DNA of 63,938 nucleotides, filler included, from Octopus bimaculoides (lineage: Eukaryota), in the NCBI RefSeq assembly GCF_001194135.2. It is 8 parts of 7 records of this genome, joined end to end, with 100 filler letters (N's around TTAATTAATTAA, not from the genome) between each part and the next. Parts side by side here need not be neighbours in the genome. Positions count along the whole stretch, not along the records: positions 4,527 to 23,702 come from NC_069005.1; 7 more parts are not named here. One strand, written 5' to 3'. Numbering within the stretch: position 1 is the stretch's first letter; each line of letters begins with the position of its first letter. This document shows, in pieces, positions 5,068 through 24,065 of this stretch. Under the pieces are notes generated by a model, which was given only the letters and a program-made list of their open reading frames with translations, was not told the DNA's origin and made no database searches. Made by a program: the position numbers and the translations under genes.

Positions 5068-5099
<32 letters not shown>

Positions 5100-5290
5100 C
5101 ATACACACACACACACACATAGACACAAACACGCACACACACACAGATATATAGAGGTGCAGATATGGTTGTATGGTAAGAAGTTTGCTTCCCAACAACA
5201 TGGTTCCGCGTTCAACCACACTGTGTGGCACCTTGGACAACTGCAAATGTATTCTACTATAGCCTTGTGCCGAGTGGATTTACATAAAAC

Positions 5291-7395: not shown

Positions 7396-7818
7396 AAGGA
7401 CTGGTTCGCGCCAAGGGGCATCCTGAACTCCAGGACAGAGTTTTGCCTTCAAATGACGCCAGCCCGCTGAGTAGGTCAAAATCCACTACCCCGCGATCGA
7501 AGCGGGTACTGAAGCAACGTGAAATGCTCAAGAACACAACGCGCCGCCCAGTCAGGGAATCGAACCCGCGATCTAGCGATCTTGAGTGCAGCAGGCTAAC
7601 CACTAGGCCACGCGCCTTCATACATACACACGTGCGCGTGCGTGTGTGTGTGTGTGTGCATGTATGTAGAATTCTATCTTGCTAAGTACGCTATAATCAA
7701 AACTGTACCTGTTCAGTTGGGTGTCCAATGTGCGAGAGTGGTCTATTGTCGAATCATATTCGGTTAGGCGTCAATGTTTGAGAATGGTCTCTAACTAACA
7801 TTCAACTACAGTCTGTTG

Positions 7819-9879: not shown

Positions 9880-10289
9880 CTTTCAAGAATTAAACAGATG
9901 CACGTCAAAAGAACGAATGGAAAATTCACACACTAGACATGGATGTGTTCTTAGATGGACAAGCTGTTGAAAAGATTAGCATTAATTACAGCAGATAATT
10001 CTAAAACTTAAATTCTAATTAATTTCTTTCAGTCAATTTTTTTTAATATTTATTTCTTTAACTTCTTTTTTTTTTTCCATGTTTTCCTCGTCATCATCAT
10101 CATAATTTTACCATCCACTTTTACCATGCTTCATTGGTTCAATGGAGATTTTTGTTTAAATTGCAGCAGATTTTCTACTGCCTAATGCCCATGTGCCAAC
10201 TCTCACCTGTTTCCATATCAGGTAATATCTGTCCATGGACAGATTATAAAGGATGTTCATTAAAGATTTCCCCTTCTCAAGGGCCTCTG

Positions 10290-11745: not shown

Positions 11746-12616
11746 ATTATTATTATTATTATTATTATTCAGTAGTTTTATTTTTATAACGAGCTTTCAC
11801 TTCACTACCGAGCACAGCTCTGTGTGCCTTGGGTATGTGCTGTGGTTTGCTGTGATGCTCTTATGGTTACTGTATTGAAAGTGTTTTGCGTAGGATGTGT
11901 GCAGTGCCCAGTAGTGCAATTTTCTGTATGTTATATATATTTGTAAGTCCTGGTGTTTTTGTTATGTATTTGTCTGAATATTTTTTTATTATACCTAAGG
12001 CACCTACTATGATAGGAATTGTTTCTGTTTTTAGATTCCACATTCGAGTTACCTCTATTTCCAGGTCTTTGTATTTTGAAAGTTTTTCCATTTCTTTTAG
12101 AGAAACGTTGTCATCTGCTGGTATTGATACATCAATTAGAAAGCATTTTTTTTCTTCATGATCTTTGACAACTATATCTGGTNNNNNNNNNNTTTGTTAT
12201 GTATTTGTCTGAATATTTTTTTATTATACCTAAGGCACCTACTATGATAGGAATTGTTTCTGTTTTTAGATTCCACATTCGAGTTACCTCTATTTCCAGG
12301 TCTTTGTATTTTGAAAGTTTTTCCATTTCTTTTAGAGAAACGTTGTCATCTGCTGGTATTGATACATCAATTAGAAAGCATTTTTTTTCTTCATGATCTT
12401 TGACAACTATATCTGGTCTATTGGCCTTAATTTCTCTATCTGTGTGTATTGGCATATCCCATAGTATGGTTGCTTTCTCGTTTTCTGTGACCTTTTCTGG
12501 CATGTGTTTATACCATCTTTTTTCTGTTATTCCATAGTGTTGGCATAGCTTTCAGTGTATATAGGTCCCAGCTCTGTCGTGTCTGTGAATATATTCCTTC
12601 TTAGCCAGGACTGGGC
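11746..12616 (-). mobile_element. 5'-truncated R4/Dong-clade non-LTR retrotransposon in POP5 intron 1
   Basis: CPVLAKKEYIHRHD...ILWDMPIHTDREIKANRPDIVVKD..LIDVSIP..KLSKYKDL...IQKIALLGTAHILRK restriction-like endonuclease domain. (TAA)n tail and (ATT)n on both flanks. Confidence 0.9.
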
Positions 12617-12838: not shown

Positions 12839-13312
12839 ACACACATGCACACATACATGCTCTCATGCATACATGAGCCAACAAGGGAGTCTCTAAGCGA
12901 AGGGCTCTCATCAGAGGTCCACAGAAGATTTTTCTGTTCGAGTTTTTGTGCTATAAATCGGTTGAGCTTCTGCAATGCATAGAATACTTTTATTCTTTTA
13001 ATTGTTTCAGTCATTTGACTGCGGCCATGCTGGAGCACCACCTTTAGTCAAACAAATCGACCCGCCCCAGGACTTATTCTTTGAAAGCCTAGCACTTGTT
13101 CTATCAGCCTCTTTTGCCGAACCGTTAAGTTAAAGGGACGTAAACACACCAACATCGGTTGTTAAGCGATGGTGGGTGGGTGGGGACAAACTCAGGCACA
13201 CAAACATATACACACACACACATATATATATATACACACAACGGGCTTCTTTCAGTTTCCATCTACCAAATCCACTCACAAGGCTTTGGTTGGCCTGAGG
13301 ATATAGTAGAAG

Positions 13313-13563
13313 GTGGCACGTAAAATACACCATTTCAAGCGTGGCTGTTGCCAGTACCGCCCGACTGGCTTTTGTGCCGGTGGCACATAAAAACACCCAC
13401 TACACTCTCGGAGTGGTTGGCGTTCGGAAGGGCATCCAGCTGTAGAAACTCTGCCAGATCAGATTGGAGCCTGGTGTAGCCATCTGGTTTCACCAGTCCT
13501 CAGTCAAATCATCCAACCCATGCTAGCATGGAAAGCGGACGTTAAACGATGATGATGATGATG
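13313..13563 (+). mobile_element. RTE-tail SINE/LINE 3' end with (GAT)n tail
   Basis: gtggttggcgttcggaagggcatccagctgtagaaac...catggaaagcggacgttaaacgatgatgatg. Reverse copy at 52113-52560, partial copies at 17720-18030, 56600-56700 and 57005-57090. Confidence 0.7.
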
Positions 13564-13765: not shown

Positions 13766-13903
13766 TCAAATATTTTGATTGTAACACCAACACTATAATA
13801 ATAGTGGTGCCCAGGAAACACTGTCTTATGGTGCAGTCTGCAGTCTGCTTCATTAAACTCATCAAATGCAAGGAGGCATCTATGCGAACTCTTCATGTTG
13901 GAG
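13766..13903 (+). CDS. POP5: POP5 coding exon 3
   Basis: tttcttttag|...|gtaaaa. Encodes (V)KYFDCNTNTIIIVVPRKHCLMVQSAVCFIKLIKCKEASMRTLHVG, cf. human VRYLNAYTGIVLLR...FNTLHVG. Confidence 0.92.
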
Positions 13904-13964
13904 GTAAAATTAAGTCACTACTCTTTCTTGCCATTCGTCTTCTTGGTTTACTTGTGTGTGTATA

Positions 13965-14044
13965 TATATTTGTATATGTGTGTGTGTGTGTGTGTACGTG
14001 TGAGTATATATATGTATATGTGTGTGTGTGTGTACGTGTGAGTG

Positions 14045-14095
<51 letters not shown>

Positions 14096-14365
14096 ACGTA
14101 TGAGTGTATATATATATGTGTGTGTACGTGTGAGTATATGTGTGTGTGTGTATGTGTGAGTGTATATGTGTGTGTGTGTACGTGTGAGTGTATATATATA
14201 TATATGTGTGTGTGTGTGTACGTGTGAGTGTATATATATATATATGTGTGTGTGTACGTGTGAGTATATATATGTGTGTGTGTACGTGTGAGTGTATATA
14301 TATATGTGTGTGTGTGTACGTGTGAGTATATATATATATATATATGTGTGTATATGTACGTGTGG
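13965..14365. repeat. Compound (TG)n/(TA)n minisatellite anchored on tacgtgtgagt in POP5 intron 3
   Basis: About 11 variable-length units, each (TG)n-TACGT(G/A)TGAGT-(TA)n or similar. Confidence 0.8.
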
Positions 14366-14597
14366 GTGTATACATATTCTTTCGCACTTTTACTTGTTTC
14401 AATCATTTGACTGCGACCATGCTGGGGCACCACCTCAGAGGGTTTTAGTCAAACAAATTGACCCCAGGGCTTATTCTTTGTAACCTTACTACTTATTCTA
14501 TCGGTTTCTTTTGCTGTCACCACCACCACCATTACCACCACCACTGTTCACAGGTTCAATTCCAGTGAAAGTTGTTTCCTATCTATTCTTCCTCCAG

Positions 14598-14681
14598 GGA
14601 CGATAAAATCTACAAAGAAGATCCTGCTTGCTCAGCGTTACCAAGAGTTGCCTCGTGCGTTTCTGGAATGCAAGACCCAAG
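14598..14681 (+). CDS. POP5: POP5 coding exon 4
   Basis: ttcttcctccag|...|gtgagt. Encodes (G)TIKSTKKILLAQRYQELPRAFLECKTQ, cf. human GTIRTCQKFL. Completes the TLHVGGTI signature across the splice. Confidence 0.92.
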
Positions 14682-15522
14682 GTGAGTTGCTGAAGACTTG
14701 GTGTTTGGGATGTTTTTTTATATATGTTTTCATTGTTGTCATCATCATCATCATCGTCATCTTTGTCATCATCATCATCATCACCACCATCATCAGCAGC
14801 AGCTTAACACCAAGAGCATCATATCTTCATTATTATAGTTCGTCATCACCACCATCATCATCATTGTCGTCATAATAATAATAATAATAATAATCTTTTC
14901 TACAATAGGCACAAGGCCTGAAAGTTTTATGGGGAAGGGATGAGTTGATTACGTTGACCCCCCCAATGCGTAACAAATTGACCCCAGTATTTTGTTTTTC
15001 TTTAAGACCTAGTACTTATTCCATCAGTCTCTCCCTTGCCGNNNNNNNNNNNNNNNNNNNNNNNNNNNNNNNNNNNNNNNNNNNNNNNNNNNNNNNNNNN
15101 NNNNNNNNNNNNNNNNNNNNNNNNNNNNNNNNNNNNNNNNNNNNNNNNNNNNNNNNNNNNNNNNNNNNNNNNNNNNNNNNNNNNNNNNNNNNNNNNNNNN
15201 NNNNNNNNNNNNNNNNNNNNNNNNNNNNNNNNNNNNNNNNNNNNNNNNNNNNNNNNNNNNNNNNNNNNNNNNNNNNNNNNNNNNNNNNNNNNNNNNNNNN
15301 NNNNNNNNNNNNNNNNNNNNNNNNNNNNNNNNNNNNNNNNNNNNNNNNNNNNNNNNNNNNNNNNNNNNNNNNNTGATAGAGCTTGGCACCTGTGACGTTG
15401 CAGCTCATTTCTACAGCTGAGTGAACTGGAACAACGTGAAATAAAGTGTCTTGCTCAAGAACACAACACACAGCCTGCTCTGGGAATCAAACTCGCTCCC
15501 TGATGATTGTCAGCCATGTGCC

Positions 15523-15556
<34 letters not shown>

Positions 15557-15816
15557 CAATAGGCTTCTTTCAGTTTCCGTCTACCAGATCTCCTCCTATG
15601 GCTTTGATCTTCCTGAGGTTACATTAGAGGACATCAGCTCAAGGTTCCACACAGTGGGACTGAACCCAGAACCATTTGGTTAAGAAGCAAACTTCTTACC
15701 ACACAGCCACGCCCGCAACGTATAATGTTTGTTTTGTGATGTTTTTCTTGTGATTTTCGTTATTTATTTTTTAAAACTTTTTTTTTAATGTTTATTTTTT
15801 CTTCTTCTTCTTTCAG

Positions 15817-15980
15817 AAGAGAGAGAGAAAGTTCAGGCCTCGATCTTTGACAGTTGTTCCGGAAAGCTCGAGTCCCAAATAGAAGAAAACACCTTCAAGA
15901 TGCGAAGGAATGTCGTGACAACAACAACAACAACAACGACGACAGCAACAACAACAACGACAACAACAACAACAACATGA
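15817..15980 (+). CDS. POP5: POP5 terminal coding exon 5
   Basis: cttcttctttcag|. Encodes (E)EREKVQASIFDSCSGKLESQIEENTFKMRRNVV-T9AT10-stop, cf. human EREAIQKSVTRSC. The five exons total 531 nt (176 aa + stop) with consistent phases. Confidence 0.82.
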
Positions 15981-16655: not shown

Positions 16656-18419
16656 NNNNNNNNNNNNNNNNNNNNNNNNNNNNNNNNNNNNNNNNNNNNN
16701 NNNNNNNNNNNNNNNNNNNNNNNNNNNNNNNNNNNNNNNNNNNNNNNNNNNNNNNNNNNNNNNNNNNNNNNNNNNNNNNNNNNNNNNNNNNNNNNNNNNN
16801 NNNNNNNNNNNNNNNNNNNNNNNNNNNNNNNNNNNNNNNNNNNNNNNNNNNNNNNNNNNNNNNNNNNNNNNNNNNNNNNNNNNNNNNNNNNNNNNNNNNN
16901 NNNNNNNNNNNNNNNNNNNNNNNNNNNNNNNNNNNNNNNNNNNNNNNNNNNNNNNNNNNNNNNNNNNNNNNNNNNNNNNNNNNNNNNNNNNNNNNNNNNN
17001 NNNNNNNNNNNNNNNNNNNNNNNNNNNNNNNNNNNNNNNNNNNNNNNNNNNNNNNNNNNNNNNNNNNNNNNNNNNNNNNNNNNNNNNNNNNNNNNNNNNA
17101 GAAAAGTGTTCCTAAACAGATGGAGTTGTTGTGCCCAGATCTTCTTTCCTTTGATCACTAGAGGTTTGCTGGTCAGAAATAGGCTCAGGGTCAATAACAA
17201 TAGGGTATTAGTGACAACATTTTTTATTGGTGTTTTACTAAGTATTCCAGTTGAGAAGATGTCGGACTTCTTACCATTCCTCTGTAACATGTCTTCCACA
17301 CTGGAACATTGTTTTTTTTTTTGTACATAAATAAAAGCTTTTTATTTTCTAAGAGTTCCTTTGACAGAGGGAAAAAAAAATCTTTTTGTTTTTCTTTCCT
17401 TTTATTTGCAGTCCAATGACTTCCCATTCTTCTCTCTTTCACAATCAGCTATGTCATTTAGCATCTGCCTTCCAAGTTGGCCTGAGTTGGACAGTTCGAC
17501 TGGATCTGATGAGGCCAGAGACTGTATTACGCTCCAATGTATGCTTTGGCACAGTTTCTATTGCCTGATGACCTTCCTAAAGCAAACCACTTTGTGGAGT
17601 GTGCTACACACTTCTTTGTAGCACCAACACTAGTGAGGTTACCATGTACCCCACAAGACTAAGATCTGCATATATGGGTGTGTCTGTGTATGTATATACA
17701 TGTGTACACACACACACACACACAGCAGTTGCAGGAGCTGGCAAACCAGAGGACTGTGCCAAGCTCTGCTGTCTTCTTTGACATGGTTTCTACGGCTGGA
17801 TGCTCTTTCTAATGCCAACCACTTAACAGAATGTACTGGAAGCTTTTCTTCGTGTCAGTTTTCAGTATTCTGTGAGAACATGTCTGGCCACGGAGAAATA
17901 TTACCTTACGTGGAAACAGGTGAAGGTTGACAACGGGAAAGGTCATCCAGTCGTAGAAAATCTGCCTCAGTAAACTCCGTCCGACTCATGCAAGCATGGA
18001 AAAGTGGACGTTAAAATTATGGTGATGAGACACGGGTGATGAAATGTTGAGTTTGTGTAACAGGGAAGAGAAAAGAGGAGAATGTTCCATTGGATATGTG
18101 ATCGATAGGATGCAAAGGTTTTGAGGGTAGAGGAAAATGGGCATCAGAGATACTTGCTCAAGGGTACAACAGTGATGATGTGGATTTGCAGCGATGCATT
18201 TGAAGAATGATCATCCGTGTGTAAAAGGAGCCAAGTGCTGCAGGTGTAAGGACGTTGTGGGAGAGGAAGACCGACTAAGATTTTTCGTTGCGTGTACCAT
18301 TCAGAAAGCCCCGCGGGCCGCAGGTTTCCCGTGACTGATGCAGACGATACGATAAGGCGAGAGTTGATCTCAGGATGGATGCGTTGACTTGCGAAAGAGA
18401 GATAAAAAAAAATGATCTG

Positions 18420-18790
18420 AATTTAAACAAAATTAAATTGAACTGCTCTCATTAGGATTCGAACCTGATGCGAAAGGACGTCAAGAATGAACTTAAAACA
18501 AAGTTGCACTGGTATGATTCGAACCTGACACCGAGAATATCTTAGTTAACTTAAAAAAAAAAAAAAAAAGAGAAATTAAGCTTAACTGCTATGACTAGGA
18601 TTCGAAACTGATGCCTAACGATGTCAGAAATTATTCTGAAACAAGATAAAGTTGCACTGCCATGAACAGGATTCGAACCTGAAGTCGTAGGATATCTAGA
18701 ATTAACTTATAATAAAACTTGCCATGAGCAAGGATTTCGCATAGAAATGCCGAAGAATATCTGAATTATACTAAAACAATGTGTAAATAG
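18420..18790 (-). repeat. Tandem array of 5 degenerate copies of the tRNA-His 3' end (B-box/T-arm plus acceptor strand)
   Basis: Plus-strand ggattcgaacc-like cores at 18455, 18515, 18598, 18669 and 18732, versus 18804 in the tRNA. Each is preceded by an actgcc(a/g)tga-like acceptor complement. Period 60-83 bp. Confidence 0.85.
18773..18776 (-). terminator. Pol III T4 terminator of tRNA-His
   Basis: First TTTT run, about 17 nt past the tRNA 3' end on the minus strand. Confidence 0.55.
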
Positions 18791-18792
18791 AC

Positions 18793-18864
18793 TGCCGTGA
18801 CCAGGATTCGAACCTGGGTTACCACGGCCACAACGTGGGGTCCTAACCACTAGACGATCACGGC
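18793..18864 (-). tRNA. tRNA-His-GTG: tRNA-His (GTG)
   Basis: GCCGTGATCGTCTAGTGGTTAGGACCCCACGTTGTGGCCGTGGTAACCCAGGTTCGAATCCTGGTCACGGCA. 72 nt with all four stems paired, A and B boxes, GTG anticodon and A73. Stem changes relative to metazoan tRNA-His preserve pairing. Confidence 0.97.
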
Positions 18865-19373
18865 CACCCGTCTAATTGCTGCAAAGTTTCCAGATTAGTT
18901 AATTTCAATCGCTTCTGTTCTGTCAGAGAAATGCCGTGTCAAAATGGACCAGAAGTTCTCAAACGTTTTGGGTAACCGTCCCCACCTCACGGCCACATAA
19001 TACCCTCAGCGCCCCCTATTTTTACATATAAATAAATATTCTATATTTTACTAATGTATATATACTAAAGATCATTTGATATTTAATATTATATTATCTA
19101 ATTTGTATACAATACTATAATAATATTATAATGAATTCATAGTGCCCCCTAATCCATTGCCTTCCTCCCAATGCCTCCTTTTTCTCTACCGCCCCCTTAA
19201 CAGGGGTATGACAAAAGCGGCTGTGTGGTAATTAGCTTGCTTGCCAACCACATGTTTCCGTGTTCAGTCCCACTGCGTGGCACCTTGGGAAAGTGTCTTC
19301 TACTATAGCCCCTGGGCCGACCAAAGCCTTGTGAGTGGATTTGGTAGACGGAAACTGAAAGAAGCCCATCGCG

Positions 19374-19416
<43 letters not shown>

Positions 19417-20284
19417 ATGGATGTGTGTATATGTTAGTCTGTGTTTGTCCCTCCAACATCGCTTGACGACCGATGTTGGTGTGTTGTGTTTACGTCCCTG
19501 TAACTTAGCGGTTCGGCAAAATAGAATAAGTGCTAGGCTTACAAAGAAAAAGTCCCGGGGTCGATTTGCTCGACTATAAAAGCGGTGCTCCAGCCTGGCA
19601 GTCAGTTTCCGTCTACCAAATCCATTCACAAGGCTTTGGTCGGCTATAGCAGAAGACACTTACCAAATCTGCCACGCAGTGGGACTGAACTCGAAATCAT
19701 GTGGTTGGTAAGCAAGCTTCTTATCTCACATCTGTAATGCGCCATTATAGAAGTAAGATTGATATTTATTTTAATTTAGAGTGCGGCGAACAATGTGACC
19801 AACTCCTGGTTCGGAATTTAAAAAAAAGTCAGTAATCAAGGTTTTGGGAAGAAATGAAAATATAGAGCAAGGGAAATAATTCAGTGTCCTATATGATGAT
19901 ACGTTTGAAATTACTTCCCTTGGTCCATCTTTCAAAGTAACGGAATGCACACACGCACACGTCATATACTTTACCTTGAATCGATGGTTGTTTTTGCGAT
20001 CCCTCGAACTGCTAGAAATAGCAGCGAAATTTACCTGGTCATGCGTGGCTGGAGTGTTTTTTGATCATAGGTCTACTGGAAAGAGACTAACCGTGGATTA
20101 AATACATACATACACATAAATGTCTATACATATAAAATCTATATGTATACATATACACACAAACATATATATACACATACATGTATATATAAATAAATAC
20201 ACACATACATACAGGTATGTATGTATGTATACATATATATATATTATGTATATATATATATACACACGCATATAAGTCTGTCTG

Positions 20285-20346
<62 letters not shown>

Positions 20347-21548
20347 TATGTATATATATATATATNNNNNNNNNNNNNNNNNNNNNNNNNNNNNNNNNNN
20401 NNNNNNNNNNNNNNNNNNNNNNNNNNNNNNNNNNNNNNNNNNNNNNNNNNNNNNNNNNNNNNNNNNNNNNNNNNNNNNNNNNNNNNNNNNNNNNNNNNNN
20501 NNNNNNNNNNNNNNNNNNNNNNNNNNNNNNNNNNNNNNNNNNNNNNNNNNNNNNNNNNNNNNNNNNNNNNNNNNNNNNNNNNNNNNNNNNNNNNNNNNNN
20601 NNNNNNNNNNNNNNNNNNNNNNNNNNNNNNNNNNNNNNNNNNNNNNNNNNNNNNNNNNNNNNNNNNNNNNNNNNNNNNNNNNNNNNNNNNNNNNNNNNNN
20701 NNNNNNNNNNNNNNNNNNNNNNNNNNNNNNNNNNNNNNNNNNNNNNNNNNNNNNNNNNNNNNNNNNNNNNNNNNNNNNNNNNNNNNNNNNNNNNNNNNNN
20801 NNNNNNNNNNNNNNNNNNNNNNNNNNNNNNNNNNNNNNNNNNNNNNNNNNNNNNNNNNNNNNNNNNNNNNNNNNNNNNNNNNNNNNNNNNNNNNNNNNNN
20901 NNNNNNNNNNNNNNNNNNNNNNNNNNNNNNNNNNNNNNNNNNNNNNNNNNNNNNNNNNNNNNNNNNNNNNNNNNNNNNNNNNNNNNNNNNNNNNNNNNNN
21001 NNNNNNNNNNNNNNNNNNNNNNNNNNNNNNNNNNNNNNNNNNNNNNNNNNNNNNNNNNNNNNNNNNNNNNNNNNNNNNNNNNNNNNNNNNNNNNNNNNNN
21101 NNNNNNNNNNNNNNNNNNNNNNNNNNNNNNNNNNNNNNNNNNNNNNNNNNNNNNNNNNNNNNNNNNNNNNNNNNNNNNNNNNNNNNNNNNNNTATATATA
21201 TATATATATATACATGTATATACATACACATACGCACACACACACACACACACATATACACACAGATATGCGTGTGAGTGTATCTTTTTGTCTTTAATTG
21301 ATTCATTTCTTTAGCTGTGGCCATACTGGAGCACCTTGGTGAAGGGTTTAGAGGGACAAATCGACCGCAGCACTTCTCTTTTTTTAAGTTTGGTACTTAA
21401 CCTAGTGATCTATTCTGCAGAACCGCTAGCATACTAGGGCCGTAAACAAACCAGCATTGACTGTCAAAGCACACATGCAGTTACAACTCAAAAACAGAAA
21501 CACACACACGCACACACACGTTTATATGTATGTATGTATGTTTGTAGA

Positions 21549-21652
21549 CAGACAGCCAGCCAGCCAGCCAGCTAGACAGACGGACGGACAGACAGACAGA
21601 CAGACAGACAGATAGATAGATTGATTGATGGATAGAGAGAGAGAGAGAGATG

Positions 21653-21690
<38 letters not shown>

Positions 21691-21766
21691 CAGACAGACG
21701 GACGGACGGACGGACGGACAGACAGACAGACAGATTGATTGATGGATAGAGAGAGAGAGAGAGATG

Positions 21767-22253: not shown

Positions 22254-22936
22254 CCACATCATCAATAACAACAACAATAATAATAATACGAGCAACGCCA
22301 ACGACAGCAGCAGCAGCAGCAACTACAACAACAAGGACAACGAGAACGCATTGTCGATGCAGACGGATAACACTTCGGAACGTCTTCTCTCTCTTCTGGT
22401 GTGTGTGTAGGCGCAGGTGTAGCTGAGGTCGACTTTGCCTTTCATCCTTTCGGGGTCGATAAATTAAGTACCAGTTACGCACTGGGGTCGATATAATCGA
22501 CTTAATCTCCTTGTCTGTCTTTGTTTGTCCCGTCTATGTTTAGCCCCTTGTGGGCAATAAAGAAATAAGAAGCTTGCTTCCCAACCACGTGGTTCAGAGT
22601 TCAGTCCCACTGCGTGGCAACTTTGAGCCACGGTCTTCTACTATAGCCTCGAACCGACCAAAACCTTATGAGTGGATTTGATAGACGGAAACTGAAAGAA
22701 GCCAGCCCGTCGTATATGTATATATATATGTGTGTGTATATTTGTTTGTCTGTGTTTACAGCCCCACCACCATCGATTGACAGCCCGATGTTGGTGTGTT
22801 AACGTCCCCGTAACATAGCGGTTCGGGAAAAAAAGATCGATAGAATAAGTACTAGGCTTACAAAGAATACGGTGACTGAGTAATATGCTTTATTATTATT
22901 AAAGCTACAAAAAAAACATCTCAAAAATATCACAAT

Positions 22937-22980
22937 AAACTGCTACTCAGAGTTTCACGTTCCCGTTCGCCGGAGAGTTT
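22937..22980 (-). ncRNA. Minimal hammerhead-like motif, U4C family (degenerate copy)
   Basis: aaactct-CCGGCGA-acg(ggaa)cgt-GAA-ACTCTGAGT-A-gcagttt. Confidence 0.5.
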
Positions 22981-23024
22981 AGATTGTCCGACGAACGAGA
23001 ACGTGAAACTCCGAGTAGCATTTT
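22981..23024 (+). ncRNA. Minimal hammerhead-like motif, U4C family
   Basis: agattgt-CCGACGA-acg(agaa)cgt-GAA-ACTCCGAGT-A-gcatttt. Confidence 0.55.
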
Positions 23025-23399
23025 ATTTGATATTTTTTATCTTTGTAATGTTTTTGCAGATCTGATAATCATGTCTGTGTGTATATATATATATAGCAAC
23101 AAGAAAAGGGAGAGGAATATGAGGTACTCATCAACTTGCAGACAATGTATTCCGTTGATGAACCTGTTTATTTTATAACCAAAGTGACAAAAAAAGACAA
23201 TATACAGACACTTATGACATACCATGTCATATCAACAATTAAGATTTCATATTTAAAGGACATTTAGCAATTGGAGAAGGGACAAAATCTTACAGCTGTT
23301 TCGGCCTAGCGTTGGTATGCCCCATTCTATCTCTATAGCTCCAGTACGCTGGAATATATATGTAGAAACAGTACTGTACTGTATATTTTTTCATTGCTT

Positions 23400-23802: not shown

Positions 23803-24065
23803 GTATCTGTCATTACAGTATCGAAATGTGATTGTTTCAGTTAGAATAGTTTCATTTTTAAAGTGAAAGTATTTGACATGAGTGTTTTTGTTTCACTTTT
23901 GACACGTAATACTTAAATAGTGGAGGAGATATTATGTTGCTGTGGGCTCGAACTCTGCAAGAAGTTAAAATTTTTTTTGACTAAAACACAACTGGAACCC
24001 TAAGTAAGGCATGTGTAAAATTTGAATGAAATTGGTTGCGTAGTTCTCGAGTTTTAGGGATTCAC

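What the first reader, a model, noticed from the sequence alone, without database searches (positions are those of the whole stretch)
18420..18864. tRNA-His followed by five tandem echoes of its own 3' end (B-box/T-arm array)
Seen: on the minus strand the tRNA ends CCAGGTTCGAATCCTGGTCACGGCA-GT. Five more units follow, each an AT-rich spacer plus a CAGGTTCGAATCCTGGTCATGGCAGT-like segment (T-arm, 3' acceptor strand, discriminator and first trailer bases) and a T-rich stretch. None has an A-box or anticodon arm. Units 1/3 and 2/4 resemble each other more, suggesting an (ab)(ab) higher-order repeat of about 140 bp. TTCGAA is kept in 4 of 5 units while spacers diverge. Known: B-box-only sites can bind TFIIIC without transcription and act as chromatin boundaries; repeated tRNA 3' ends are known downstream of E. 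coli tyrT and at integrative-element attachment sites. Inference: a TFIIIC-loading or insulator cassette between POP5 and the tDNA, a read-through transcript cut into small RNAs by RNase Z, or scars of repeated tRNA-targeted duplication or integration.
Basis: partly seen in the sequence, partly recalled or inferred. Interest (0 to 1): 0.75.

Follow-up and report, generated by a model that had tools for sequence, protein, structure and literature searches.

The report
Octopus tRNA-His gene with 3'-end echoes
An octopus histidine-tRNA gene is followed by five old tandem copies of its own last 24 bases plus trailer, in which only the 12-base site that normally recruits the tRNA transcription factor TFIIIC has stayed intact. 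The structure is a kind of duplication that also recurs in bacteria and archaea, and here it may have been kept as extra factor-binding sites.

Summary
The window is Octopus bimaculoides. tRNA-His(GTG) lies at 18793-18864 on the minus strand. Five head-to-tail units of 60-83 bp follow it (18404-18742). Each unit echoes tRNA positions 50-72 plus about 45 nt of trailer, including the T-run. The "spacers" are homologous too, so this is a tandem duplication array.

The same five units, in the same order, occur downstream of POP5 in two other Octopus assemblies. They are absent from the Argonauta hians locus, which carries a His/Ala tRNA cluster instead.

Among the paralogous units U2-U5, CAGGTTCGAATC (the B-box) is invariant, while neighbouring columns differ by about 36% (permutation p about 1e-4 to 1e-3). 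Its CpG survives in a CpG-depleted region. This favours past selection for TFIIIC binding.

Between species the B-boxes do not evolve significantly slower than the spacers (2/50 versus 20/213 variable columns, p=0.27). In O. bimaculoides two of the four carry changes at TFIIIC contact bases. The units contain no A-box and show no RNA structure beyond chance.

Database scans found about 130 bacterial and archaeal tRNA genes with the same "tRNA plus 3' echoes" layout. The origin is therefore a general mutational process.

The parts
18793..18864 (-). tRNA-His(GTG) gene, 72 nt. A-box TCGTCTAGTGG at 18847-18857, B-box GGTTCGAATCC at 18804-18814.
   Evidence: ARAGORN; Rfam tRNA 62.2 bits, E=1.7e-12; motif scan. 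It is 72/72 identical in O. vulgaris and in GCA_006345805.1, and identical to 8 of the 9 Argonauta tRNA-His copies.
18743..18792 (-). Trailer of the real tRNA. Together with tRNA positions 50-72 it forms unit U0 (18743-18816). It holds the first Pol III-type terminator, a T4 run at 18773-18776.
   Evidence: It is homologous to the spacers of U1-U5. About 10-20 nt of it still align to Argonauta tRNA-His trailers.
18682..18742 (-). Echo unit U1 (61 nt). It is degenerate: the B-box is lost (ATGCGAAATCC) in all three Octopus species.
   Evidence: It is the fastest-evolving part of the array, at 77% identity between species against about 90% background. The unit profile detects it only weakly, E=0.19.
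18611..18681 (-). Echo unit U2 (71 nt). Perfect B-box at 18669-18679. Its acceptor-derived part reads TGTTCATGGCAGT. It has no T4 run.
   Evidence: nhmmer E=5e-18.
18528..18610 (-). Echo unit U3 (83 nt). B-box GTTTCGAATCC at 18598-18608, carrying G53T in O. bimaculoides only. T17 run at 18553-18569.
   Evidence: O. vulgaris and GCA_006345805.1 keep GGTTCGAATCC. G53 is a base-specific TFIIIC contact (PMC11811891).
18468..18527 (-). Echo unit U4 (60 nt). B-box GGTTCGAATCA at 18515-18525. O. bimaculoides has a 6-nt deletion just after it. T4 run at 18495-18498.
   Evidence: The other two species have GGTTCGAATCG followed by CGG(T/C)CATGCCGGT.
18404..18467 (-). Echo unit U5 (64 nt), the last unit. 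Perfect B-box at 18455-18465. T4 run at 18429-18432 and T9 run at 18404-18412.
   Evidence: The unit profile finds no further units beyond it.
18936..19000 (-). Possible decayed second tRNA-His copy upstream (uncertain). It runs GTGGCCGTGA...CACGGCA over 65 nt. The other two species have 75 nt here, which equals the 3-nt leader plus 72-nt tRNA.
   Evidence: The two end anchors match the real gene at the right spacing and are conserved in three species. The interior similarity is no better than shuffled sequence.
13766..15980 (+). Context only: the last three coding exons of POP5 (about 13766-13903, 14598-14681 and 15817-15980). POP5 is convergent with the tRNA, and its stop codon lies 2.4 kb from the end of the array.
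   Evidence: tblastn and splice-site reading. The joined exons are 100% identical to NCBI O. bimaculoides POP5.

Best explanation
Origin (shown). A ~71-bp segment was tandemly duplicated. It ran from position 50 of the tRNA-His gene (the start of the T-arm) to about 45 bp past the gene's 3' end. Further duplication of this segment gave one intact gene followed by five head-to-tail partial copies.

A duplication with its left breakpoint inside the gene and its right breakpoint downstream always leaves an intact gene at the head. It is therefore tolerated, and it recurs at tRNA genes in Bacteria and Archaea as well.

The array predates the split of O. bimaculoides from O. vulgaris. The units have since diverged by about 36-40% from one another.

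Function (inferred). The only part of the echo that resisted this decay is CAGGTTCGAATC, the B-box. This is the DNA element read by the tauB module of TFIIIC. The echoes have no A-box, no 5' half and no RNA structure.

I therefore propose that U2-U5 act, or acted for most of their history, as promoter-less extra TFIIIC binding sites next to an active tDNA. They would hold additional TFIIIC immediately downstream of the single tRNA-His gene. The likeliest consequence is to help TFIIIC retention and re-loading on that gene, or to strengthen the tDNA's nucleosome-free, barrier-like character. Which of these consequences applies is not shown.

In O. bimaculoides the constraint appears partly relaxed, because U3 and U4 carry changes at TFIIIC contact bases.
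For: Anatomy:
- One full tRNA is followed by five units that repeat tRNA nt 50-72 plus the trailer and T-run.
- The same five units occur in the same order downstream of POP5 in O. vulgaris (L001) and in GCA_006345805.1 (L002).

B-box versus the rest, among paralogues:
- CAGGTTCGAATC is invariant across U0 and U2-U5 in two species (0 of 120 pairwise mismatches). O. bimaculoides has one change.
- The adjacent gap-free acceptor-derived 13 nt differ at 26-37% of pairs, and the spacers at 37-40%.
- Column-shuffle p is <=2e-4 for the a-priori window and about 1e-3 for any 12-nt window. The Fisher test on invariant columns gives p=2e-5 to 3e-3.

CpG evidence:
- The region is CpG-depleted (observed/expected 0.68, with TG and CA in excess).
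- The TTCGAA CpG is nevertheless kept in U2-U5 in all three species, while the acceptor-stem CpG (CACGG) is lost in U2-U5.

Other points:
- The conserved bases include the positions that human TFIIIC220 reads base-specifically: G53, T55, C56, G57 and C61 (PMC11811891).
- There is no A-box in the array, no tRNA-like score and no folding signal. The conservation is therefore DNA-motif-like, not RNA-like.

Generality of the origin:
- In metagenome contigs, 49 of 105 sub-tRNA-spaced T-arm arrays have one complete tRNA at the head.
- In named bacterial and archaeal genomes the figure is 80 of 107.
- None clearly has the tRNA at the tail; the one exception sits at a contig edge.
- The E. coli tyrTV 178-bp repeats overlapping 19 nt of the tyrV 3' end were re-verified.
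Against: - There are no occupancy or expression data.
- Between species the B-boxes are not significantly slower than the rest of the array: 2/50 versus 20/213 variable columns, Fisher p=0.27, Poisson p=0.15.
- U2-U5 as a whole differ by 8.0% between O. bimaculoides and O. vulgaris, against a 10.0% background. This is essentially neutral.
- In O. bimaculoides, U3 has G53T and U4 has C62A plus a 6-nt deletion. U4 in the other two species and U5 in O. vulgaris differ at C62. These are TFIIIC contact bases.
- U1, the echo nearest the gene, lost its B-box in all species.
- This is a single locus. None of the nine tRNA-His genes in the Argonauta locus has echoes, so any benefit is not general.
- The paralogue test is partly post hoc, because the array was noticed through this motif.
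- Identical architectures arise in prokaryotes, which have no TFIIIC. The architecture alone therefore says nothing about function.
Confidence: 0.5

Rival explanations
1. Neutral relic. The array is only the decaying product of tandem duplication at the tRNA 3' end. The B-box identity among units is chance, mutational heterogeneity or an alignment-anchoring effect. Nothing binds there in a way that matters.
For: - Between species, the array (8.0% mismatch) evolves like the 10.0% background.
- The B-box versus spacer difference between species is not significant.
- Three of the four echo B-boxes show a lineage-specific or ancestral change at a TFIIIC contact base.
- U1 lost its box entirely.
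- The same architecture arises about 130 times in organisms without TFIIIC.
- The array is absent from Argonauta.
Against: - Twelve contiguous invariant columns stand against about 36% per-column mismatch elsewhere. The permutation p is about 1e-3 even allowing any window.
- The invariant block coincides with the one a-priori functional DNA element.
- The adjacent 13 gap-free columns are 26-37% diverged, so alignment error is not the cause.
- The CpG inside the block is retained in a CpG-depleted region, while the other tRNA-derived CpG was lost.
Confidence: 0.35
2. Collapsed gene cluster. The echoes are remnants of separate full-length tRNA-His genes, like the His/Ala cluster at the orthologous Argonauta locus, each of which lost its 5' two-thirds.
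For: - Argonauta has 9 tRNA-His and 5 tRNA-Ala genes at the same place downstream of POP5.
- The first trailer bases of U2 and U4 (GTGCAAC) and of U0 (GTCTAATT) match the trailers of individual Argonauta copies.
- A possible decayed tRNA-His lies upstream in Octopus.
Against: - All five units start at the same tRNA position (50) and are separated by mutually homologous ~45-nt spacers. These spacers equal the real gene's trailer.
- This scenario would need five independent deletions with identical endpoints.
- Argonauta copies are 0.4-1.2 kb apart, with tRNA-Ala genes and SINEs between them.
- The trailer matches are only 7-9 nt long.
Confidence: 0.05
3. RNA product. Pol III reads through the weak T4 terminator, and the echoes are processed (by RNase Z, RNase P or La) into small RNAs. 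The T-loop sequence would then be conserved for an RNA-level role.
For: - U0's terminator is a minimal T4 run, and U2 has no T4 run at all.
- The conserved block is also the T-loop.
- The E. coli tyrTV echoes are transcribed as the annotated sRNA rttR.
Against: - The units lack the 5' acceptor strand.
- The T-stem 3' strand is not maintained: it reads CCTAG, CGCGG and CCTAA in U3-U5.
- Predicted folding is no better than shuffled sequence. The whole array gives z=-0.2 and the units give -0.9 to +1.4, against -2.0 for the real tRNA.
- Several T-runs of 4 to 17 bases would stop Pol III within the array.
Confidence: 0.05
4. Integration scars. The repeated 3' ends are att-site duplications left by repeated insertion and excision of a tRNA-targeting mobile element, or the unit is part of a dispersed SINE or satellite.
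For: tRNA 3' ends are classical integration targets (established knowledge). tRNA-derived SINEs with B-boxes are abundant in these loci.
Against: - The periods are 60-83 bp, with no element or ORF between copies.
- The spacers are copies of the gene's own trailer.
- The unit profile hits nothing else in about 100 kb of octopus sequence.
- The SINE B-box contexts are unrelated.
Confidence: 0.03

Closest known systems
E. coli tyrTV downstream repeats (rttR/tpr region)
   Same: A complete tRNA gene is followed by head-to-tail repeats, each carrying the tRNA's own 3' end. In K-12 there are three 178-bp copies, the last overlapping 19 nt of tyrV. The first description by Egan and Landy, and by Rossi et al., is from my own knowledge.
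   Different: It is bacterial. The unit is 178 bp and contains only 19 nt of tRNA, with no T-arm. The copies are 95% identical, so they are young. The region is annotated as an sRNA and a small protein. No B-box/TFIIIC logic applies.
Prokaryotic 'tRNA plus tandem T-arm echo' arrays found here
   Same: The layout is exactly the same: one full tRNA at the head, then 2-10 echoes of 56-73 bp. The echoes start inside the tRNA (position 36-67, median 50) and include the 3' end and a short trailer. Examples are Nocardia jiangxiensis (L139), the archaeon Halovenus marina (L123) and an Acidobacteriaceae MAG with 10 echoes (L136).
   Different: The copies are nearly identical, so they are recent, and conservation is uniform along the unit. 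The hosts lack TFIIIC. The octopus array is old (36-40% diverged), with conservation confined to the B-box. I do not know whether these prokaryotic arrays have been described as a class.
Dictyostelium discoideum external B-box (ex-B)
   Same: It is an extra B-box downstream of a tRNA gene, outside the coding region. It is found about 41 bp downstream of 66% of that genome's tRNA genes (PMC3159450).
   Different: There is a single box at a fixed ~41 bp, and it is a genome-wide feature. Here there are four boxes 113-327 bp past the gene, while the unit at the ex-B-like position (U1) has lost its box. Only one locus is known, and the Argonauta tRNA-His genes lack echoes.
S. pombe IR-L/IR-R B-box clusters, COC sites, and yeast and human ETC sites
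   Same: They are clusters of B-boxes without A-boxes. IR-L and IR-R each hold five B-boxes bound by TFIIIC without Pol III, and they act on chromatin domains (PMC7474672; ETC overview in PMC11811891). The octopus locus also has five B-boxes in 360 bp, counting the gene's own.
   Different: Those sites are not visibly derived from, or attached to, an active tRNA gene. Their TFIIIC occupancy and boundary activity are experimentally shown. Here both are untested.
tRNA-derived SINEs
   Same: They carry B-box sequences of tRNA origin outside true tRNA genes, and they are common in these cephalopod loci.
   Different: SINEs keep an A-box and a tRNA-like 5' head, have a tRNA-unrelated body, and are dispersed. 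The echoes have none of these properties.

Membership tests
tRNA 3'-end tandem echo array (tyrT-type partial tandem duplication) | A complete, canonical tRNA gene lies at the 5' head of the array. | tested here: met
   ARAGORN; Rfam 62 bits; 100% conserved in three Octopus assemblies.
tRNA 3'-end tandem echo array (tyrT-type partial tandem duplication) | The downstream units are head-to-tail copies that begin inside the tRNA and include its 3' end plus trailer. | tested here: met
   The units start at tRNA position 50 and carry an acceptor-derived strand, GT, a T-run and a homologous spacer. nhmmer E-values for U2-U5 run from 1e-11 to 1e-18.
tRNA 3'-end tandem echo array (tyrT-type partial tandem duplication) | The units lack the 5' half of the tRNA (A-box, D and anticodon arms). 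| tested here: met
   No A-box within 2 mismatches. No tRNA match at E<=10 other than the real gene.
Extra-TFIIIC (ETC) or B-box-only TFIIIC site | Match to the B-box consensus GGTTCGANTCC, including the base-specific contacts G53, T55, C56, G57, C61 and C62. | tested here: met
   U2 and U5 are perfect. U3 (G53T) and U4 (C62A) have one mismatch each in O. bimaculoides. In the other two species U3 is perfect, U4 has C62G, and O. vulgaris U5 has C62T.
Extra-TFIIIC (ETC) or B-box-only TFIIIC site | No functional A-box and no Pol III gene at the site. | tested here: met
   The absence of Pol III itself is not testable here.
Extra-TFIIIC (ETC) or B-box-only TFIIIC site | The B-box is conserved more than its surroundings. 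| tested here: inconclusive
   Among paralogous units: yes, p about 1e-4 to 1e-3. Among orthologues in three species: 2/50 versus 20/213 variable columns, p=0.27.
Extra-TFIIIC (ETC) or B-box-only TFIIIC site | TFIIIC occupancy in vivo without Pol III or TFIIIB. | not testable with these tools
Dictyostelium-type ex-B box | A single B-box about 41 bp downstream of the tRNA gene. | tested here: not met
   The first intact echo B-box starts 113 nt after the tRNA end. U1, at about 51 nt, has no B-box in any species.
Dictyostelium-type ex-B box | Present at most tRNA genes of the genome. | not tested
   No whole octopus genome was available. None of the nine Argonauta tRNA-His genes has an echo.
tDNA chromatin boundary or insulator | Lies between differently regulated Pol II domains and blocks spreading or enhancers. 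| not testable with these tools
   The context is only suggestive. The POP5 stop codon is 2.4 kb from the array's end. The ANF_receptor gene model starts at an ATG at 18931, but from my reading of the, 20 and 29 sequences (not a tool result) that ORF is interrupted in O. vulgaris. No gene is called there in L001 or L002.
tRNA-derived SINE or dispersed satellite | A tRNA-like head with A- and B-boxes, and many dispersed copies. | tested here: not met
   No A-box. The unit profile finds nothing outside the array in the 19-kb piece or in L001-L003.
Integrative-element att-site repeats | Direct repeats of the tRNA 3' end flank a kilobase-scale element with integration genes. | tested here: not met
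   The spacing is 60-135 bp, and the spacers are copies of the trailer. ORFs overlapping the array are short and incidental; the longest listed is the 47-aa frame across the tRNA itself.

The most novel reading that the evidence does not exclude
The array is a selected TFIIIC-loading cassette born by tandem duplication of a tRNA gene's 3' end: five B-boxes in 360 bp, one in the gene and four promoter-less. It would be an animal counterpart of the five-B-box boundary elements of fission yeast. It would also be a caught-in-the-act example of how extra-TFIIIC sites originate from tRNA genes. The raw material would come from a duplication process that the prokaryotic arrays show to be universal.
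Probability: 0.3. Interest if true: 0.65.

Novelty: new variant of a known kind. Interest (0 to 1): 0.4.

Why it matters
If the echo B-boxes bind TFIIIC, this locus is a natural, evolutionarily dated example of how B-box-only (ETC-like) sites arise from tRNA genes. It would also be a compact test object for what extra TFIIIC next to a tDNA does in an animal: four boxes that vary naturally at contact bases between sister species.

If they do not bind TFIIIC, the locus is a useful caution. Partial tandem duplication at tRNA 3' ends is a general mutational outcome, with about 130 bacterial and archaeal cases found here. It automatically creates B-box-like motifs that can be mistaken for regulatory cassettes.

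Either way it is a single locus, and it is not a property of cephalopod tRNA-His genes in general.

Tried and rejected
No RNA or DNA reads could be laid, and read laying was not attempted.
- Tandem Repeats Finder did not report the array at minimum score 30, because the units are too diverged and carry indels. The repeat finder and manual alignment did detect it.
- The (ab)(ab) higher-order repeat gave only marginal differences in pairwise identities, so I do not assert it.
- The upstream 'pseudo-tRNA-His' has matching end anchors, but its interior alignment is no better than shuffles. I kept it only as a passing note.
- A possible sixth unit (CATCAGTCACGG at about 18331-18342) was not detected by the unit profile and is dropped.
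- RNA-level readings found no fold beyond shuffles.
- Apart from the tRNA, the Rfam hits in the neighbourhood are microsatellite-driven miRNA false positives, far below the gathering scores.
- Literature searches for a published description of tRNA 3'-echo arrays or of tyrT repeats in the open-access library returned nothing relevant. Two searches failed on term syntax.
- The first POP5 search returned only three cephalopod proteins, so no further octopod orthologues were reachable.
- I ran no further search on the spurious ORFs across the array. The POP5 exon search had already shown that run-level contigs of octopus are not represented.
- Some hits of the three-B-box scan are unrelated, for example a 30-bp coding repeat in Pseudomonas veronii (L162) and tightly packed full tRNAs. 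These were separated out by ARAGORN.
Full report
**What is there.**
On the minus strand of the window, ARAGORN finds a single tRNA-His(GTG) at 18793-18864. Rfam's tRNA model scores it at 62 bits, and no other tRNA-like match appears between 17500 and 20000 even at E<=10.

Five further units follow head to tail downstream on the same strand. Their coordinates are U1 18682-18742, U2 18611-18681, U3 18528-18610, U4 18468-18527 and U5 18404-18467.

Each unit begins with the equivalent of tRNA position 50 (CAGGTTCGAATCC...). It continues through a decayed copy of the 3' acceptor strand and the first trailer bases (...TCATGGCAGT). It then runs through about 45 nt that align with the real gene's own trailer, including its T-run.

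The whole ~70-bp unit is the repeat, and the structure is a tandem duplication array.

GGTTCGAATCC with at most one mismatch occurs five times in 360 bp. In the 28-kb locus L004, which contains this region, these five plus one SINE copy make six hits, against 0.17 expected by chance (the window search is). A-box-like sequence occurs only in the true gene. T-runs of four or more bases follow the tRNA (18773-18776) and occur in U1, U3 (T17), U4 and U5.

The proposed (ab)(ab) higher-order pattern is only weakly visible.

**Where it is.**
Three POP5 coding exons lie upstream on the plus strand. Joined, they are 100% identical to NCBI's Octopus bimaculoides POP5.

The window is identical to the chromosome-level assembly GCA_001194135.2 across the region. 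POP5 is convergent with the tRNA, and its stop codon is 2.4 kb from the array's end.

On the other side, the annotation starts an ANF_receptor gene model at an ATG at window 18931, 67 bp from the tRNA's 5' end. By my own reading of the sequences, that short ORF is interrupted in O. vulgaris. No gene is called there in the other two assemblies. I do not lean on it.

**Comparative evidence.**
I fetched the orthologous intervals through POP5. These were O. vulgaris GCA_951406725.2 (L001), GCA_006345805.1 (L002, which I recall as O. sinensis) and Argonauta hians (L003).

Both Octopus loci carry one tRNA-His followed by the same five units in the same order. The array therefore predates their split from O. 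bimaculoides.

Argonauta has a cluster of nine tRNA-His and five tRNA-Ala genes at this position. No echo lies within 500 nt downstream of any His copy. Its other B-box hits are SINEs.

A profile built from the units finds U0 and U2-U5 (and weakly U1) in each Octopus locus. It finds nothing else in about 100 kb. In Argonauta it finds only the true tRNA 3' ends with 10-20 nt of trailer.

**Is the B-box special?**
Among paralogous units, yes.
- In O. vulgaris and in L002, the 12 columns CAGGTTCGAATC are invariant across U0 and U2-U5 (0 of 120 pairwise mismatches). O. bimaculoides has one change.
- The adjacent, gap-free acceptor-derived 13 columns differ at 26-37% of pairs, and the spacers at 37-40%.
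- Column shuffling gives p<=2e-4 for the a-priori window and about 1e-3 for any 12-column window.
- The region is CpG-depleted (observed/expected 0.68). Even so, the TTCGAA CpG is retained in U2-U5 in all three species, while the acceptor-stem CpG was lost.
- The invariant block contains the bases that human TFIIIC220 reads base-specifically: G53, T55, C56, G57 and C61 (PMC11811891).
- The T-stem's 3' strand is not maintained, and the units fold no better than shuffled sequence. The whole array gives z=-0.2 and the units give -0.9 to +1.4. The signal looks like a DNA motif, not an RNA structure.

Among orthologues the test is underpowered and does not separate the classes.
- The O. bimaculoides to O. 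vulgaris background mismatch is 10.0% over 9.4 kb.
- U2-U5 differ by 8.0%, the U0 trailer by 12.5% and U1 by 23%.
- Variable columns number 2 of 50 in the B-box 13-mers against 20 of 213 in the rest of U2-U5 (Fisher p=0.27).
- The changes that did occur hit contact bases. O. bimaculoides has U3 G53T, and U4 C62A with a 6-nt deletion. O. vulgaris has U5 C62T.
- U1 had already lost its box before the species split.

**Is the architecture unusual?**
No. I scanned for three exact GGTTCGAATCC motifs spaced too closely (56-73 bp) to be full tRNAs. This found 110 stretches in metagenome contigs and 107 in species-representative bacterial and archaeal genomes.

ARAGORN classification gave the following.
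- Metagenomes: one complete tRNA at the head of the array in 49 of 105 cases. Another 21 were cut by a contig edge, 30 had no tRNA, and 5 were packed full tRNAs.
- Genomes: one complete tRNA at the head in 80 of 107 cases.
- None clearly had the tRNA at the tail.

The echoes start at tRNA positions 36-67 (median 50). They include the 3' end and a short trailer, and they are nearly identical to each other.

The classical E. coli case was re-verified. Three 178-bp repeats lie downstream of tyrV, and the last overlaps the tRNA's final 19 nt.

The layout follows from geometry. A tandem duplication with one breakpoint inside the gene and one downstream leaves the gene intact at the head. Because these hosts have no TFIIIC, the origin of such arrays needs no B-box function.

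**Interpretation.**
*Shown:* this is an old tandem duplication of tRNA nt 50-72 plus trailer. It is conserved as five units in at least three Octopus assemblies and absent from Argonauta. It is not a SINE, not an integration scar and not a set of tRNA-like RNAs.

*Inferred (confidence about 0.5):* the echo B-boxes were kept by selection as promoter-less TFIIIC sites adjacent to the single tRNA-His gene. This resembles Dictyostelium external B-boxes (PMC3159450) and the five-B-box, Pol III-free TFIIIC elements IR-L and IR-R of fission yeast (PMC7474672). The constraint is partly relaxed in O. bimaculoides.

The downstream consequence is not determined. It could be TFIIIC retention for re-initiation, or a barrier or nucleosome-free region.

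*Main rival (about 0.35):* a neutral relic whose B-box identity is fortuitous. The collapsed-cluster, read-through-RNA and integration-scar readings are each unlikely.

**Limits.**
- Only three closely related species carry the array.
- No whole-genome census of octopus tRNA genes was possible.
- The paralogue test is partly post hoc.

**Verdict.**

The architecture is a known kind, and it proved to be widespread in prokaryotes. The octopus case is a variant distinguished by its age and by conservation confined to the B-box. Interest is moderate.

Noticed in passing
L005-L114 (metagenome contigs) and L116-L222 (bacterial and archaeal genomes); for example L139 3356-3600 (-), L123 6170-6330 (+), L136 3432-4000 (-): About 130 prokaryotic tRNA genes (Arg, Ser, Tyr, Gln, Leu, Lys, Glu and others) are each followed by 2-10 nearly identical tandem echoes (56-73 bp) of their own 3' part plus a short trailer. 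Hosts include Actinomycetota, Acidobacteriota and haloarchaea. This is a recurrent architecture, and I could not find it described as a class in the searchable literature.
   Followed up: partly
window 18936-19000 (-); L001 about 22345-22420 (-); L002 about 23815-23890 (-): Upstream of the tRNA-His lies GTGGCC(G/A)TGA ... CACGGCA. It is 75 nt long in the two other species, exactly the 3-nt leader plus 72-nt tRNA, and 65 nt in O. bimaculoides. It may be a fully decayed second tRNA-His. The interior similarity is not significant. An NCBI gene model (ANF_receptor family) places its start codon (ATG at 18931) here.
   Followed up: partly
L003 17073-24011: In Argonauta hians the interval downstream of POP5 holds 9 tRNA-His and 5 tRNA-Ala genes in about 7 kb (4 of the 5 Ala fall in this stretch, with one more upstream of POP5). 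They partly alternate on opposite strands and are interspersed with tRNA-derived SINE fragments. The tRNA-His sequence is identical to the octopus gene in 8 of the 9 copies.
   Followed up: partly
L001 about 21500-21700 (-) and L002 about 22970-23200 (-): Just beyond the array, O. vulgaris and the L002 species carry a GC-rich tandem repeat of about 60 bp (GGCTCGCCCAAGGACGGGCTGTCTCACGCGACCC...). It is absent at the corresponding place in O. bimaculoides.
   Followed up: no
window 18682-18742: U1, the echo closest to the active gene, differs by 23% between species against a 10% background, and the U0 trailer differs by 12.5%. This fits the elevated mutation reported next to highly transcribed tRNA genes (my recollection of the literature, not checked). 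Alignment uncertainty in U1 may contribute.
   Followed up: partly
window 5070-5280, 13133-13400, 15445-15680, 19232-19660, 22604-22800: Several copies of one dispersed repeat occur on both strands. Its translated frame reads ...DQSLVSGFGRRKLK.... Two copies flank the (CA)n/(TA)n microsatellite at 19374-19440, which produces spurious miRNA-family hits in Rfam.
   Followed up: no
window 7500-7600 (-) and L004 9716-9726 / L001 9704-9714: A tRNA-derived SINE copy with a B-box-like GGTTCGATTCC lies upstream of the POP5 gene model (L004/L001 coordinates are below the model's start at 10001). It is conserved in position between O. bimaculoides and O. vulgaris.
   Followed up: no
window 11957-12417: A 235-bp tandem duplication (2.0 copies, 95% identical) spans a short N gap (12183-12192). 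It may be partly an assembly effect.
   Followed up: no
window 15918-15977: O. bimaculoides POP5 ends in a 19-residue Thr/Ala run encoded by an (ACA)n microsatellite. This makes it 176 aa, against 160 aa in O. vulgaris and 159 aa in Argonauta.
   Followed up: no
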